Assembly (NCBI RefSeq): GCF_037042905.1
Contig: NC_087246.1
Location: 7,998,001-8,062,000, forward strand
Origin: Lytechinus pictus
Lineage: Eukaryota
DNA: 64,000 nt
Direction of reading: 5' to 3'
Made by a program: the position numbers and the translations under genes. The notes below the pieces were generated by a model, which was given only the letters and a program-made list of their open reading frames with translations, searched no databases and was not told where the DNA came from. Position 1 is the first letter of the stretch; every line of letters begins with the position of its first letter. Of this stretch, positions 41,974 through 46,510 are shown in pieces.

Positions 41974-44355
41974 TCCAAAAGCATCAGTAAGGTAAAGCTC
42001 AGAATTGCTTCAATGCATTAAAGAGGACCATAAGAGGGTTTGTAGACAAGCCTATAATATATAATTTGTTGACCGGATTGACAATGATCCAGGCTGTAAC
42101 AATTAGCATGTTGGGAGCCCTTAATACCAATAGCTATGACTACATTGGAATAGCATTATTATAGGAAGGCAAAGATTGTTAGTCTTAGTATTCACCACTG
42201 ATCATGATGATGATGATGCTGATCTACAAGTCCTGGGACCCAGTCCTGACCCAGATATGGCCAGATAACATATTGTTTGGTCAAGCAGGTGTAGACAGAC
42301 TACTGAAGAAATTGTTAAAGAAAAAAACCTGCATGAAGCTACATGTACTAGGCCAGACGGAATCTCTGCTACACTTCTTAATGAGACTACTCATTAGATC
42401 TTACCTGCCATAAGTTTGCTTTTCCTGGCCTCCCTTTATCATGTTTATACGGTGAAATTTCAAGAAAGTCTAAGTCGTTCCCATCCATATAAGAAAGGGT
42501 TGTCAACTCTAACAAGCTACACACCAATTCAAATACTGTGCTTTGTTCTTGCCAATCCCATCATCTTGTCCGACTATCAACGCGGCTTTAATAGGAAGCG
42601 AAGAACATATTTCCAGTATTTTTCCTTGGATATAAATCGTATTAGGATTTGAATGCTTAGTGATAGCAGCATATTAATTTGAAAAACTGACATGCTTTCA
42701 CTGCAGTCAATATGATAAAAATCAAAGTTTCTTGACATTTTTCATATAAGGATACTTATTTGCATAATATGCAAATGAGGAAGATTTGCTAGCTTTTTTT
42801 AAAAAGACATTGAACTTATTTATTCATCATGAACTTTTGTTCAAAATTACTTGCTGTGGACATTTAATTTGTCATCTTTGGATTAATTTCCTCATTTTCT
42901 ATTTTCTTAAATGGCTAATTTGCATAATATGCAAATTAATTTTCAGGTATTGGGATGAATTCTCATGCTTAGTGATATAGAAGCATATTAATGTCAACAT
43001 AAATGAAATGTTTTCAAGCAGTCTATATGAGAAAAATCACAATATCTTGACATTTTTCCATATAAGGATGCTTATTTGCATAATATGCAAATGAGGTAGA
43101 AATTTTTGCACTTTTGATTAAAAAACAATGAATTCAGTTATTTATCATGAATTTCCATTCAAATTAAATTGTTTTGGACATTTAATTTGTAATCTTTGGA
43201 TTATTTCCCTTCTTTTTCTAATTTTTCATGGCTAATTTGCATAATATGCAAATTTCATAAATTTCCTCTGCTTGGATTTCTTGGGACTTTTAGTATGTTG
43301 TTTAGGGGACCTTCCTGGAAAGCATTTCAGTGGAATATCTCGTGTTGCAATTAGTGGTGGGTTACCCCGCTATTCTGGCTAGATTGACTGGACTAGTACT
43401 GTACATGGCAGTTGTATGATACATTTCAAGAGAGCAAAACCTTATCTTAGATTCTGACATAACATTCATAAAATGATACTTCAACTTTTTCCTTTTCCTA
43501 TTTTTCCTAATTTTTCCCCCAATGGCATGGAACCTTTTTTTTGGGAGGGGGGAGGGGGAGTGCCCCCAAGACCAATCCAATATCCAATCTTTAGTGAGCT
43601 AAATTACGATGAATGATCAGATTTCAAGTCAATTGTGAGGGACATAAAAAAAATAGGGGGAACAGCTGCTAACACTCCCACCACACCAATCTTTTCATAA
43701 CTTCCCTTACTTTGTCGTTTAAACATGTTTTGTTTAGCACTGTACTACAGGTGCAATGAACAAAGAGATAACAGATACTCCCTAATAATACACAAAGAAT
43801 GGATTCAAGAGTTTCTCTTCAGTCCCAGAACAAAAGGTTTGAAAACTATGACCTCCCTTCCTCTTTCACTTTTACCCAGATTCCATGCTCTTCTTATAAC
43901 ACGGAAGAGATTGGGATGGTGGAGGGAGAAAGAGACAAAGGGCACACGTTCACTCAGGCATTTAAACCCCACACCACACACACTAGCCATTGGCTCAATT
44001 GTGGGTCGAGTAAAGGCCAACGCACGCCGGGTGGACCAGCTGGGAATGCGACAGGTTCAAACTTCAATAGCTAGTCTATATCGCGACGATACAATTTTTA
44101 TGCATTGACGATTAGTGGACAAGAAACTTAAAATGTTGTTGAAATCTTTAGGGTACAAGTCAATTAATTCATATCAACAATAAAATCATAACCAACAAAT
44201 GAACGGTAGTCGTTAATTTGAAAAACAAATTATGAAATCAGACAATCAAAGCAATGCATATCGACGATTGCAAATTCCATACAGTCGAGTCAAGCTCGGA
44301 GGACGGAGAGTCGCGCTAATGGTGGTGCGATGCTCAAACAAAGGGGTCGACTTAC

Positions 44356-44546
44356 CAGACAACACCAAACGCCCCATAACCGATTGGTCGATCGGGCTCG
44401 AATTCTCTTCTAGGCACAGACGAAGCGGCAGGAGAAGGCTGGTAGTAGGACTGAGTTGCACTCAGGATTGCACGGTCGTGGGCGCTGGAGGACCCGTTAG
44501 CGAAAGCCATCTGAGAGTGAGAAATCCTTGATCCACAAACAGCCAT
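44356..44546 (-). CDS. NLK: Nemo-like kinase, coding exon 1
   Basis: Translates MAVCGSRISHSQMAFANGSSS...EFEPDRPIGYGAFGVVW. EPDRPIGYGAFGVVW is the NLK glycine-rich loop, and the N-terminus resembles vertebrate MSLCGARANAKMMAAYNGG. Phase-2 donor TG|GTAAGT at 44355. Confidence 0.95.
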
Positions 44547-45010
44547 ATCACATCGGGGAGAGACCAGCAGCGAGAAACCCAGGCGGAAGACGCCTTGACC
44601 AGCCGAAGCGACGGCAAGCTGGCGAGGGGAGGGAGTCAACGTCGAAAAGCGGACTTTAAATCCGTTATTTCTCAGCAACGACGTATACACATGCCTTAAA
44701 ATTGCACCAGACCTGATGTAATACAGTGATATTTTAACTCAGTATCAATGTCCACTTCTTGTTAACTGAGGTAGAGGAGATATTTAGGATCCAGCGCGGT
44801 GAGAGCGGCTTACACTCCTCGGACTGTTGGAGCACAGCCACCCTACGAAACTGCTGTCACAAAAAAGTAGCAGAACAAAGAGTTCACAAATCTCGCTTCG
44901 GTCGAGGTCTCGCAAATCCCGAGATTGTGTGCACGTGTCTTGAAGAAGAATGACTAAAAATAACGTGGCCGTACGTTGGAAGTCGAACGCTGATTCACTA
45001 AACAAATTGA
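44547..45010 (-). promoter_or_regulatory. NLK 5' UTR / proximal promoter (CpG-rich)
   Basis: CpG-rich unique sequence immediately upstream of the NLK ATG. The TSS cannot be determined from sequence alone. Confidence 0.5.
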
Positions 45011-45299
45011 TTTAAATGACATTGCTTTTGCTTTACATCATCATCATCATCATCATCACTGGCGGATCCAGGGGGGGGGGGGCACAGCCGGCCCGTGCCC
45101 CCGTCCCGTTTTAGAGGCACTATTATAATTTGTAATGTAAAAATGCCGTTAAAGTGTGCCCCCAGGCTTTTTTTTTTTGCTTGTCAAATTTTATCGTCGA
45201 CGAAATATACAGTATATATATATATATAGAGAGAGAGAGGGAGAGAGAGAGAAACAAGGTTGAAACTTTCATGCTTTAATCCAACAAAATGTATTGAAG

Positions 45300-45342
45300 T
45301 CCACAAATTTTCGACGAGTACATACCGTCTTTATCAAGTGAA
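45300..45342 (-). ncRNA. Minimal variant type-I hammerhead ribozyme motif, copy A
   Basis: Minus strand reads TTCAC-TTGATAAA-GACG(gtatgtact)CGTC-GAAA-ATTT-GTGGA: stem I, variant core, stem II, GAAA, then a palindromic mini stem III. Confidence 0.6.
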
Positions 45343-45360
45343 AAGCATGAAAGTTTGAAG

Positions 45361-45403
45361 TCCACAAATTTTCGACGAGTACATACCGTCTTTATCAAGT
45401 GAA
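45361..45403 (-). ncRNA. Minimal variant type-I hammerhead ribozyme motif, copy B
   Basis: Identical to copy A, 61 bp away in direct tandem. Confidence 0.6.
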
Positions 45404-45984
45404 AAGCATTAAAGTTTCAACCTTGTTTCTCTTAATATTACTCCAACACGTGGAATATCTACCGAATATGTATATATATAAATAGTCTGCTTCGGCATCA
45501 TGATGGAATAAAATAATCACAAATGGTTTAGTAAATGCTTACTGCATGACGAAAACCTTTCATTTGAAAACACTATACCCCAGATTCCCTCAATCAATTC
45601 TCTTCTCCAAGTACGACAAACCATAACTGCCCCAAGCAAGCAATTTAAGTATCAAAACACATGTTTCTGGTCCGAAGATAACACAACAGCCCGAGCAAAG
45701 CATGCCGTCATTTTAATTCACTTACTTTCCTTATTTCGAGGTCGATTTTCTTCGTTCGAACTTGAAAATGGACTAACATTGGATTTCTGAATACAATATG
45801 CATTTGAAAACGTGATTAAATATCGAATACAATAATTTCATTCCGAAGGTCCTACTACAGGCAGAGAAGTCTTACGTAATAGCACAGCTGTTGTTTATCA
45901 TTTCGTCCTTGGCTCAACGCTCATAATCTGGCCTGTGGAGGTAAAATTGAGACAGCGGGGATTACCTGGCCTAGCGGGATTGAT

Positions 45985-46150
45985 CAGGCGGGTGTTTCAT
46001 AAAGCTGTTCGTAAATAAAAAGCGACTGGTGATCATGTCTTGCGGTAAATGGTACACACCATTGGCGAAGATCTAGCGCGCGAGAAAGGATCACCAGTCC
46101 TTCTTAAAGTCGCTCTTAACTTACGAGCAGCTTTATGAAACGGCCCCCTG
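45985..46150. mobile_element. Short MITE
   Basis: TIR GTTTCATAAAGCTGTTCGTAA / TTACGAGCAGCTTTATGAAAC, inner GACTGGTGATC / GATCACCAGTC. Confidence 0.7.
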
Positions 46151-46510
46151 GGCTTGGAAATGATTTTGGGATTTACAAACGCAAAATGGGGTATAGAACC
46201 GCAGTTTGCAATCTGAACTGCGGTCTTTCTCCAAACGGGGGTTTGACGTAATGGAAATAAAATCGTAGATTCTAAAAGGAGCATAACTCTCACAAATGAA
46301 AGGTAAAGTCACACTCTTCGTCAGTGCCCATGATGTGACAAAGAGAGAGAGAGAGAGAGAATTAAAAATCCGTTTCTGAAACAGTCGTGAAAAAACGGCG
46401 TCTATTCATGGGCATACGGATTGTGAAACTCACCTTTCAGAGAAAGCAATGCGCTTAAGATGGGGGAAGCCACTGTAAAAGACGCATCTAAAGATTACAT
46501 ACCCACACAA

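What the first reader, a model, noticed from the sequence alone, without database searches (positions are those of the whole stretch)
45249..45431. Tandem pair of minimal variant hammerhead ribozymes in a Penelope-like relic just upstream of NLK
Seen: on the minus strand, two identical units 61 bp apart read UUCAC UUGAUAAA GACG-loop-CGUC GAAA AUUU GUGGA. Stem I is UUCAC/GUGGA and stem II is GACG/CGUC. The core replaces CUGANGA with UUGAUAAA (a compensatory U3/A8 pair plus an extra A), and stem III is reduced to a palindromic AAUU. The pair sits inside a 29-bp inverted repeat between microsatellites. Known: Penelope-like elements carry such minimal or variant hammerheads in their pseudo-LTRs, and these cleave mainly as dimers through the palindromic stem III. 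Inference: the local duplication would supply both partners in cis, so a transcript in NLK orientation could self-cleave about 750-850 bp upstream of the NLK ATG, or release a roughly 61-nt unit like a tiny retrozyme.
Basis: partly seen in the sequence, partly recalled or inferred. Interest (0 to 1): 0.8.

Follow-up and report, generated by a model that had tools for sequence, protein, structure and literature searches.

The report
Penelope retrotransposon fragment with minimal hammerheads
This is a small, dead fragment of a Penelope-like retrotransposon carrying two copies of the minimal hammerhead ribozyme motif already known from such elements, and it is not transcribed at this spot upstream of the NLK gene, so it is an ordinary repeat.

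Summary
Two identical 43-nt motifs lie at 45361-45403 and 45300-45342 (minus strand), inside a 61-bp tandem duplication bounded by a 30-nt inverted repeat and microsatellites.

The stretch is a 5'-truncated insertion of a young Penelope-like element (PLE). It consists of the last 95 nt of the pseudo-LTR in inverted orientation (partly duplicated), the last 30 nt in direct orientation, and a 38-nt PLE tail, set in (TA)n/(GA)n.

The motif has every sequence feature of the published PLE minimal hammerhead: a U3-A8 core pair, an extra A before helix II, a G10.1-C11.1 pair, a palindromic AAUU helix III and a 5-bp helix I. Sister PLE families in the same genome carry the same architecture with the canonical C3-G8 core and fully covarying stems. 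A covariance model built only from those other families hits the window at these two sites alone (41 bits, E about 2e-9).

The functional inference is not supported. Stranded RNA-seq puts the NLK transcript start near 44,815-44,854, at least 390 bp downstream of the element. Depth over the element is 0-1.2, against 25-78 on NLK exon 1.

PLE minimal hammerheads with U3-A8 were described in 2014, and this scan had already noted such motifs elsewhere in this genome. Verdict: correct identification of a known kind, low interest.

The parts
45361..45403 (-). Minimal hammerhead motif, copy A (5' copy on the minus strand): helix I UUCAC/GUGGA, core UUGAUAA (U3-A8), bulged A, helix II GACGG/UCGUC, GAAA, palindromic AAUU, U17. 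Predicted cleavage is between 45366 and 45365.
   Evidence: Sequence; descriptor hit; model R1 at 41.3 bits, E 2.1e-9.
45300..45342 (-). Minimal hammerhead motif, copy B, identical to copy A. Predicted cleavage is between 45305 and 45304.
45248..45342 (-). Inverted, 5'-truncated copy of the last 95 nt of the PLE pseudo-LTR. Its sense strand is the window's minus strand.
   Evidence: 95-99% identical to at least 50 genomic copies. It aligns to the 3' end of the pseudo-LTR of the roughly 2-kb copy L031.
45294..45415 (.). Locus-specific tandem duplication of 61 bp (2.0 copies, 98%). Each unit holds 49 nt of the inverted arm plus the first 12-13 nt of the direct pseudo-LTR end.
   Evidence: No other copy among the best genomic hits has this same duplication.
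45403..45432 (+). Direct (sense) copy of the PLE, 5'-truncated to the last 30 nt of the pseudo-LTR. It forms the right arm of the 30-nt inverted repeat.
45433..45470 (+). [quoted passage not shown]
   Evidence: The same tail follows 15 of 36 arm ends in other copies. A 30-40-bp tail is a published PLE hallmark (PMC8557442, PMC11167929).
45213..45252 (.). (TA)8 and (AG)12 microsatellites abutting the inverted arm. This is the microsatellite target context typical of the family.
   Evidence: the same flanks appear in other copies.
44350..44854 (-). NLK exon 1 (5'UTR plus start of coding sequence), which is the neighbouring gene and not part of the element. The transcript 5' end lies at about 44,815-44,854.
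   Evidence: ORF; stranded RNA-seq depth 25-78 with a splice junction at 44350.

Best explanation
The stretch is a dead-on-arrival fragment of a young Penelope-like retrotransposon (PLE) inserted into a (TA)n/(GA)n microsatellite. It lies about 400-600 bp upstream of the NLK transcription start.

It has the usual PLE insertion anatomy. An inverted 5'-truncated copy (the last 95 nt of the pseudo-LTR) is joined to a direct 5'-truncated copy (the last 30 nt) plus a 38-nt tail. A later or concomitant 61-bp tandem duplication doubled the inner part of the inverted arm.

That arm carries the family's minimal type-I hammerhead motif, so the locus holds two identical copies on the minus strand. The motif is a true homologue of the PLE minimal hammerheads. 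It is the U3-A8 core variant, with the usual extra nucleotide between A9 and G10.1 and a helix III reduced to the palindrome AAUU. In a PLE transcript such motifs are thought (inferred from the literature) to pair through helix III as dimers and cleave slowly.

Shown: the homology, the architecture, the PLE context and the transcriptional silence at this locus. Inferred: any catalytic activity. At this locus the motifs are most likely inert passengers.
For: Family and anatomy:
- At least 97 genomic matches, most of them 95-99% identical to the 95-nt arm.
- Copies show inverted plus direct 5'-truncated arms, a tail at one end only, and (TA)n/(CT)n flanks.
- The roughly 2-kb copy L031 has about 430-bp inverted pseudo-LTRs around an RT C-terminal region and a GIY-YIG ORF. 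There the motif lies in sense orientation, about 410-450 nt after the stop codon and 57 nt before the pseudo-LTR end.
- Relatives at 49-57% protein identity have 718-766-aa ORFs with RVT_1 above the Pfam cut-off; one of the two scanned (L050) also gives a weak GIY-YIG match.

Motif:
- Related families carry the same architecture downstream of their ORFs, with the canonical CUGANGA core and different, fully paired helices I and II. One family carries it in both pseudo-LTRs, 3,569 nt apart.
- In the 10-family alignment, 88% of cells are paired, 9 of 10 pairs show double changes, and 0 of 500 shuffles reach this.
- Covariance model R1, built without the window's family, hits only the two sites (41.3 bits, E 2.1e-9; next best 12.9 bits).
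- Genome-wide, the core-to-GAAAAUU patterns are strongly enriched over the reversed control: 657 versus 17, and 442 versus 75.
- All the published defining features of PLE minimal hammerheads are present (PMC4209133).

Transcription:
- RNA-seq depth over 45215-45457 is 0-1.2, against 25-78 on NLK exon 1.
Against: - No Rfam hammerhead model matches even at E<=10. However, the same models also miss the canonical-core minimal hammerheads of sister families, so this test is insensitive.
- The family's own coding copies are degraded, and GIY-YIG scores just below Pfam's cut-off (20.7 versus 22.6 bits).
- The stem statistics are partly circular, because the families were collected with a descriptor that demands pairing.
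- Only about 6% of each of three RNA runs from unknown tissues was read, so rare or stage-specific transcription is not excluded.
- Catalysis was not and cannot be tested here.
Confidence: 0.85

Rival explanations
1. The cis tandem pair forms an active double hammerhead that self-cleaves a transcript in NLK orientation upstream of NLK, or releases a 61-nt unit like a tiny retrozyme.
For: Two identical motifs lie 61 nt apart, and the double-hammerhead pairing is a legal nested structure. Published PLE minimal hammerheads cleave, weakly, only as dimers or trimers (PMC4209133). The 30-bp outer inverted repeat would hold the ends together.
Against: - There is no minus-strand RNA over the element in three stranded rRNA-depleted runs (depth 0-0.7 for the relevant mate orientation).
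- The NLK transcript starts at least 390 bp downstream of the element.
- The double-hammerhead fold scores -7.7 kcal/mol against an MFE of -27.6 kcal/mol. The MFE instead pairs the self-complementary helix II/loop 2 regions of the two units.
- Helix III would be only four A-U pairs.
- The duplication is private to this locus.
- Known animal retrozyme units are hundreds of nucleotides long and occur in long arrays.
Confidence: 0.04
2. The motif descends from a hammerhead but is catalytically dead in this whole family. On this view the U3-A8 core, the extra A and the 4-bp A-U helix III are decay, not a working variant.
For: - Published in vitro activity of metazoan PLE minimal hammerheads is very low even with canonical cores (PMC4209133).
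- Hammerhead cleavage was not needed for PLE insertion in vitro, and no RNA-seq ends were seen at the site in Anolis (PMC11167929).
- Naiad PLEs thrive without hammerheads (PMC8557442).
- No excess of genomic copies starts at the predicted cleavage site.
Against: - The change at positions 3 and 8 is a double, pair-preserving change. It recurs in at least three unrelated helix contexts in this genome (UUGAUAA/GACGG, UUGACAA/GCCC, UUGACAA/GUUG).
- The GCCC/GGGC helix-II type occurs with both CUGAUGA and UUGACAA cores.
- All other invariant core positions are intact in nearly all young copies.
- The same covariation was reported in about 1,300 Schistosoma PLE motifs (PMC4209133).
Confidence: 0.3
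3. It is a MITE or Helentron-type non-autonomous DNA transposon with terminal inverted repeats, and the hammerhead-like string is a chance resemblance. This was my own first reading.
For: Short copies look like 190-bp hairpin elements with roughly 95-bp inverted arms flanked by TA repeats. Rfam gives no hammerhead hit.
Against: - Longer copies hold RT C-terminal and GIY-YIG coding sequence between the arms.
- The ends are asymmetric, with a one-sided 38-nt tail.
- Arm lengths vary as in 5' truncation.
- The motif is recognised by a model built from other PLE families.
- The descriptor gives 0 hits in 200 shuffles.
Confidence: 0.02

Closest known systems
Minimal hammerhead ribozymes (min-HHRs) of metazoan Penelope-like elements (Cervera & De la Pena 2014, PMC4209133; Lunse, Weinberg & Breaker, RNA Biol 14:1499, known here only from the reference list of PMC6765202)
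   Same: Type-I topology and location in the pseudo-LTR in sense orientation. Helix I is 4-5 bp. An unpaired nucleotide lies between A9 and G10.1. The G10.1-C11.1 pair is present. Helix III is reduced to a palindrome, implying action as a dimer. The U3-A8 covariation replaces C3-G8, as reported for Schistosoma Cercyon PLEs. Most genomic copies are solitary motifs in truncated elements, and pairs on opposite strands 100-700 bp apart are common.
   Different: This is a different host (an earlier scan note says sea urchin; I did not verify this) and a different PLE family. Helix II is 5 bp, versus 7-8 bp in the Schistosoma families. Helix III is only AAUU. The 61-nt cis spacing comes from a local duplication, not from tandem elements. 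Activity is untested.
Penelope-like elements with a C-terminal GIY-YIG endonuclease (Penelope/Poseidon, Neptune, Nematis and Hydra clades; PMC8557442)
   Same: An RT plus C-terminal GIY-YIG ORF in the family and its relatives. Pseudo-LTRs. An inverted 5'-truncated copy adjoining the unit. A 30-40-bp tail at one end. Insertion into (TA)n microsatellites. A hammerhead near the 3' end.
   Different: The window copy holds no coding sequence at all, only about 220 bp of pseudo-LTR end pieces. I did not assign the family to a clade.
Animal non-LTR retrozymes (PMC7229834; bioRxiv 10.64898/2026.07.22.740005)
   Same: Type-I hammerheads with a short palindromic helix III in tandem repeats, evolutionarily linked to PLE pseudo-LTRs.
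   Different: Retrozymes are long arrays of units of a few hundred nucleotides that are expressed as circular RNAs. Here there are only two 61-bp units, created by a local duplication, and no RNA was detected.

Membership tests
PLE minimal hammerhead (min-HHR) | Catalytic boxes: N3-U4-G5-A6-N7-N8-A9 with a Watson-Crick 3-8 pair (C-G or U-A), and G12-A13-A14 | tested here: met
   UUGAUAA (U3-A8) and GAAA in both copies. The 3-8 pair covaries as CG in 7 and UA in 3 of 10 families.
PLE minimal hammerhead (min-HHR) | One unpaired nucleotide between A9 and G10.1, and a G10.1-C11.1 closing pair | tested here: met
   A bulged A precedes GACGG...UCGUC. The G-C pair is invariant in all 10 families.
PLE minimal hammerhead (min-HHR) | Helix III absent or reduced to a palindrome (15.x/16.x), followed by U16.1-H17 | tested here: met
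   A15.1-A-U-U16.1 gives the palindrome AAUU, followed by U17. Sister families have AAUU, AGCU or ACGU.
PLE minimal hammerhead (min-HHR) | Helices I and II supported by compensatory changes among related copies | tested here: met
   Eight of nine stem pairs show double changes across 10 families, and 0 of 500 shuffles reach the observed covariation. Caveat: the families were collected with a descriptor that requires pairing. Within the young window family there is almost no variation to test.
PLE minimal hammerhead (min-HHR) | Located in the pseudo-LTR of a PLE, in the sense of the ORF | tested here: met
   In L031 the motif lies about 410-450 nt downstream of the GIY-YIG ORF stop and 57 nt before the pseudo-LTR end. 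Placement is the same in L049, L050, L052 and L059, and in both pseudo-LTRs of L057.
PLE minimal hammerhead (min-HHR) | Recognised by an independent profile of the class | tested here: met
   Model R1, built from nine other families, gives 41.3 bits and E 2.1e-9 at both sites, with the next hit at 12.9 bits. Rfam hammerhead models give nothing, but they also miss the canonical-core min-HHRs.
PLE minimal hammerhead (min-HHR) | Site-specific self-cleavage, as a dimer | not testable with these tools
   There are no RNA reads over the locus or the family from which to look for ends. The thermodynamic model disfavours the double hammerhead (-7.7 versus -27.6 kcal/mol), but it does not model the core's tertiary contacts.
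Penelope-like element | Single ORF with a reverse transcriptase and a GIY-YIG endonuclease | tested here: inconclusive
   The family's own copies keep only the RT C-terminal part and GIY-YIG (Pfam E 5e-4, 20.7 bits, below the 22.6 cut-off). Relatives at 49-57% identity have RVT_1 at 50 bits, above the cut-off; of the two scanned, L050 also gives GIY-YIG at 18.4 bits, below the cut-off, and L049 gives none. No intact copy of this exact family was found.
Penelope-like element | Pseudo-LTRs, an inverted 5'-truncated partner copy, a 30-40-bp one-sided tail, and microsatellite targets | tested here: met
   compared with PMC8557442 and PMC11167929.
Non-LTR retrozyme | Long tandem arrays of hammerhead-bearing units expressed as linear and circular RNA | tested here: not met
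   There are only 2.0 copies of a 61-bp unit, and RNA depth is 0-1.2.

The most novel reading that the evidence does not exclude
The locally duplicated pair acts as a cis double hammerhead that is transcribed only in some tissue or stage not sampled here. It would then cut upstream or promoter-associated RNA of NLK, or yield a very small (61-nt) retrozyme-like RNA. That would make it a domesticated PLE ribozyme with a host role.
Probability: 0.03. Interest if true: 0.6.

Novelty: new member of a known kind. Interest (0 to 1): 0.2.

Why it matters
It matters little in itself. It adds one more PLE family, in an echinoderm genome rich in PLEs, to the catalogue of minimal hammerheads.

It also gives a clean within-genome example of the C3-G8 to U3-A8 core covariation. 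Both core types occur on the same helix-II background. That supports the view that these motifs are kept under RNA-level constraint even though their role in PLE transposition is still unknown.

For genome annotation, it shows that Rfam's hammerhead models miss this whole class. Hairpin-like 190-bp copies of PLE ends can also be mistaken for MITEs.

Tried and rejected
1. MITE/Helentron reading. I held this after because of the inverted arms and TA flanks. I rejected it once L031 showed RT/GIY-YIG coding sequence, the one-sided tail and variable arm lengths.

2. Rfam scan of 44700-46000 at E<=10. It gave no hammerhead. The control on loci with canonical-core min-HHRs was also blank, so the test is insensitive for this class.

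3. Whole-genome search with RF00163. Only 73 of about 116,000 candidates were scored, and the two hits were sub-threshold. It is uninformative.

4. PDB sequence search with a relative's ORF. It gave only weak group II intron-like RT hits (E 0.007) and no PLE structure.

5. Reading Lunse et al. 2017 (PMC5785218). The paper is not held in the library.

6. Further cutting of genomic loci.

7. Looking for RNA ends at the predicted cleavage sites. This was impossible because no reads cover the element.

Full report
**Observation.** On the plus strand the window holds a 61-bp tandem duplication at 45294-45354 / 45355-45415. It is 98% identical (TRF score 241). A 30-nt inverted repeat (45248-45277 / 45403-45432, 97% complementary) encloses it. 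(TA)8 and (AG)12 lie on the left and a TA-rich run on the right. Read on the minus strand, each unit contains the identical 43-nt string UUCAC UUGAUAA A GACGG UAUGUAC UCGUC GAAA AUU U GUGGA, at 45403-45361 and 45342-45300. NLK exon 1 is indeed downstream on the minus strand: the ORF at 44352-44690 ends ...PDRPIGYGAFGVVW, with candidate ATGs at 44546 and 44510. I named it NLK from my own memory of the NLK kinase-domain start and did not test this further.

**What the repeat is.** The 201-bp stretch has at least 97 matches in its own genome, which is 811 Mb. Most are 95-99% identical to window 45248-45342, that is, the left arm of the inverted repeat plus the first unit. My first reading was a MITE, because short copies are roughly 190-bp hairpins made of two roughly 95-bp inverted arms between TA repeats. 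Three things overturned this.
- One end of many copies carries a conserved extra 35-38 nt (TAATATTACTCCAACACGTGGAATATCTACCGAATAT) that the other end lacks. It follows 15 of 36 arm ends.
- Arm lengths vary from 29 nt to more than 700 nt, as expected from 5' truncation.
- A roughly 2-kb copy (L031, G000:C16:4123500-4127000) has about 430-bp inverted terminal copies around an internal region. That region's open frames encode the C-terminal part of a reverse transcriptase and a GIY-YIG domain (Pfam PF01541, E 5e-4, 20.7 bits against a cut-off of 22.6).

Searching the genome with the RT piece gives 150 scored matches. They include relatives at 49-57% identity with 718-766-aa ORFs. Those ORFs score RVT_1 at about 50 bits (cut-off 29.6); one of the two scanned (L050) also gives a weak GIY-YIG match. 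An RT combined with a C-terminal GIY-YIG domain, pseudo-LTRs, an adjoining inverted 5'-truncated copy, a one-sided 30-40-bp tail and (TA)n targets together form the published signature of Penelope-like elements (PMC8557442; PMC11167929).

In ORF-sense orientation the motif lies in the downstream pseudo-LTR. It sits about 410-450 nt after the stop codon and 57 nt before the pseudo-LTR end.

**Anatomy of the window copy.** On the plus strand, from left to right:
- (TA)n(GA)n microsatellites;
- the inverted copy of the last 95 nt of the pseudo-LTR (45248-45342);
- a 61-bp duplicate of its inner 49 nt plus 12-13 nt of the following piece;
- the direct copy, 5'-truncated to the last 30 nt (45403-45432);
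- the 38-nt tail (45433-45470);
- TA repeats.

The hammerhead motifs belong to the inverted arm, which is why they read on the minus strand. The duplication is private to this locus. A few other copies (L002/L030, L026) have different partial duplications near the same junction.

**Is the motif a hammerhead?** Rfam finds none at E<=10. The same search also misses the canonical-core motifs of sister families, so this negative result carries no weight. The positive evidence is as follows.

1. *Published features.* Every sequence feature that Cervera and De la Pena list for metazoan PLE minimal hammerheads is present (PMC4209133). [quoted passage not shown] That paper also reports the U3-A8 covariation in about 1,300 Schistosoma motifs.

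2. *Chance.* A descriptor encoding these rules finds only the two sites in 128 kb of window sequence. It finds nothing in 200 dinucleotide-preserving shuffles.

3. *Sister families.* The same architecture lies downstream of the ORFs of sister PLE families, with canonical cores and different stems:
   - UUCC CUGAAGA A GGUAG..CUACC GAAAAUU U GGAG (L050/L052);
   - ACUC CUGAAGA A GACGG..CCGUC GAAAAUU C GAGU (L059);
   - UCC CUGAGGA A GACGU..ACGUC GAAAAUU U GGA (L049);
   - UAAC UUGACAA A GCCC..GGGC GAAAAUU C GUUA, with a U3-A8 core, in both pseudo-LTRs of L057, 3,569 nt apart.

4. *Covariation.* In an alignment of ten distinct families, 88% of cells pair and 9 of 10 pairs show changes on both sides. 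The 3-8 pair is C-G in seven families and U-A in three. No shuffle out of 500 reaches the observed covariation, and sliding the partners drops pairing to 24-47%. This is partly circular, because the families were collected with a pairing descriptor.

5. *Independent model.* A covariance model built from the nine families other than the window's own scores both sites at 41.3 bits (E about 2e-9). The next best hit in the window scores 12.9 bits.

6. *Genome-wide patterns.* Patterns that demand no pairing are strongly enriched over their reversed controls. CTGANGANG-N6-26-CGAAAATT gives 657 hits against 17, and TTGANAANG-N6-26-CGAAAATT gives 442 against 75. The GCCC/GGGC helix-II type occurs with both CUGAUGA and UUGACAA cores.

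The motif is therefore a genuine member of the PLE minimal hammerhead class.

**Does it do anything here?** Three stranded, rRNA-depleted RNA-seq runs of the same species were laid on 44000-46400 (about 6% of each run was read). Depth on NLK exon 1 is 25-78, from the splice site at 44350 up to about 44,815-44,854. All of this comes from pairs whose first mate lies on the plus strand, which means minus-strand RNA. Depth is zero between 44,891 and 45,052, and 0-1.2 over 45,215-45,457. The element therefore lies at least 390 bp upstream of the NLK transcript start and is not detectably transcribed. Reads at 95% identity or more from any family copy would also have mapped there, so the whole family is close to silent in these samples. 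No ends could be examined at the predicted cleavage sites.

Thermodynamically, the nested double-hammerhead structure of the two units evaluates to -7.7 kcal/mol. Two monomers without helix III evaluate to -16.7 kcal/mol, and the MFE is -27.6 kcal/mol. In the MFE the self-complementary helix II/loop 2 segments of the two units pair with each other. In the full element the 30-bp outer stem dominates (-76 kcal/mol). Such energy models ignore the core's tertiary contacts, so this result is only mildly negative.

The literature adds three points. Metazoan PLE minimal hammerheads cleave poorly even as dimers (PMC4209133). Cleavage was dispensable for PLE insertion in vitro, with no RNA-seq ends at the site in Anolis (PMC11167929). 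Hammerhead-less PLEs proliferate well (PMC8557442).

**Verdict.** The inference of cis self-cleavage upstream of NLK, or of a tiny retrozyme, finds no support. The class has been known since 2014. This scan had already recorded PLE minimal hammerheads elsewhere in this genome (notes s1-294504 and s1-294522). I rate it a new member of a known kind, of low interest.

Noticed in passing
Loci L001-L031 (family copies), measured from the pseudo-LTR 3' end: Twenty of 36 arms are 5'-truncated 89-101 nt from the pseudo-LTR end. That is the 5' edge of the hammerhead (helix I begins at 95-96 nt). None starts at the predicted cleavage site (57 nt). This could reflect RT stalling or template switching at the folded motif, or an internal transcription start. 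It could equally be an ascertainment effect of searching with a 95-nt arm.
   Followed up: partly
Whole genome G000: The helix-II type GCCC-UAU-GGGC occurs with both a canonical core (CUGAUGA) and a U3-A8 core (UUGACAA). This is a within-genome example of the 3-8 covariation on one background. One copy of the window family (L013) has U3 with G8, a single change that gives a wobble pair.
   Followed up: partly
Whole genome G000: The string TTGAAAACGCAGATCTCCACGAAAATT is very abundant among the U3-A8 pattern hits. It has no helix II pairing, so it is probably an unrelated repeat that inflates that count. A second abundant string, TTGAAAATGAATTTTGACCGCATAATTCGAAAATT, could form a 5-bp helix II (GAAUU/AAUUC) and may be another variant.
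   Followed up: no
window 45539-46267: A multi-copy repeat just beyond the element is transcribed on both strands (depth 20-115) with many variant letters. Some reads and contigs join 45538/45539 to 46255/46290, skipping 716-750 nt. This suggests another mobile-element insertion that is absent from other copies or alleles.
   Followed up: no
window 45300-45403, minus strand: The helix II/loop 2 segment (GACGGUAUGUACUCGUC) is partly self-complementary. Two units can therefore form a 16-bp inter-unit duplex, which gives the MFE of -27.6 kcal/mol. This alternative dimer contact competes with the hammerhead fold.
   Followed up: partly
L026:1623-1664:+, L020:1712-1753:-, L015:1709-1751:-, L048:2473-2515:-: Further minimal hammerhead variants from other PLE families lie next to copies of the window family. 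Their helix III palindromes are AGCU or ACGU instead of AAUU. This fits PLEs inserting into or beside one another.
   Followed up: no
window 45075-45130: A G/C-rich inverted repeat with a C12 run lies between the NLK start and the element. A few reads show opposite-strand joints there (45077/45128), probably a hairpin artefact.
   Followed up: no
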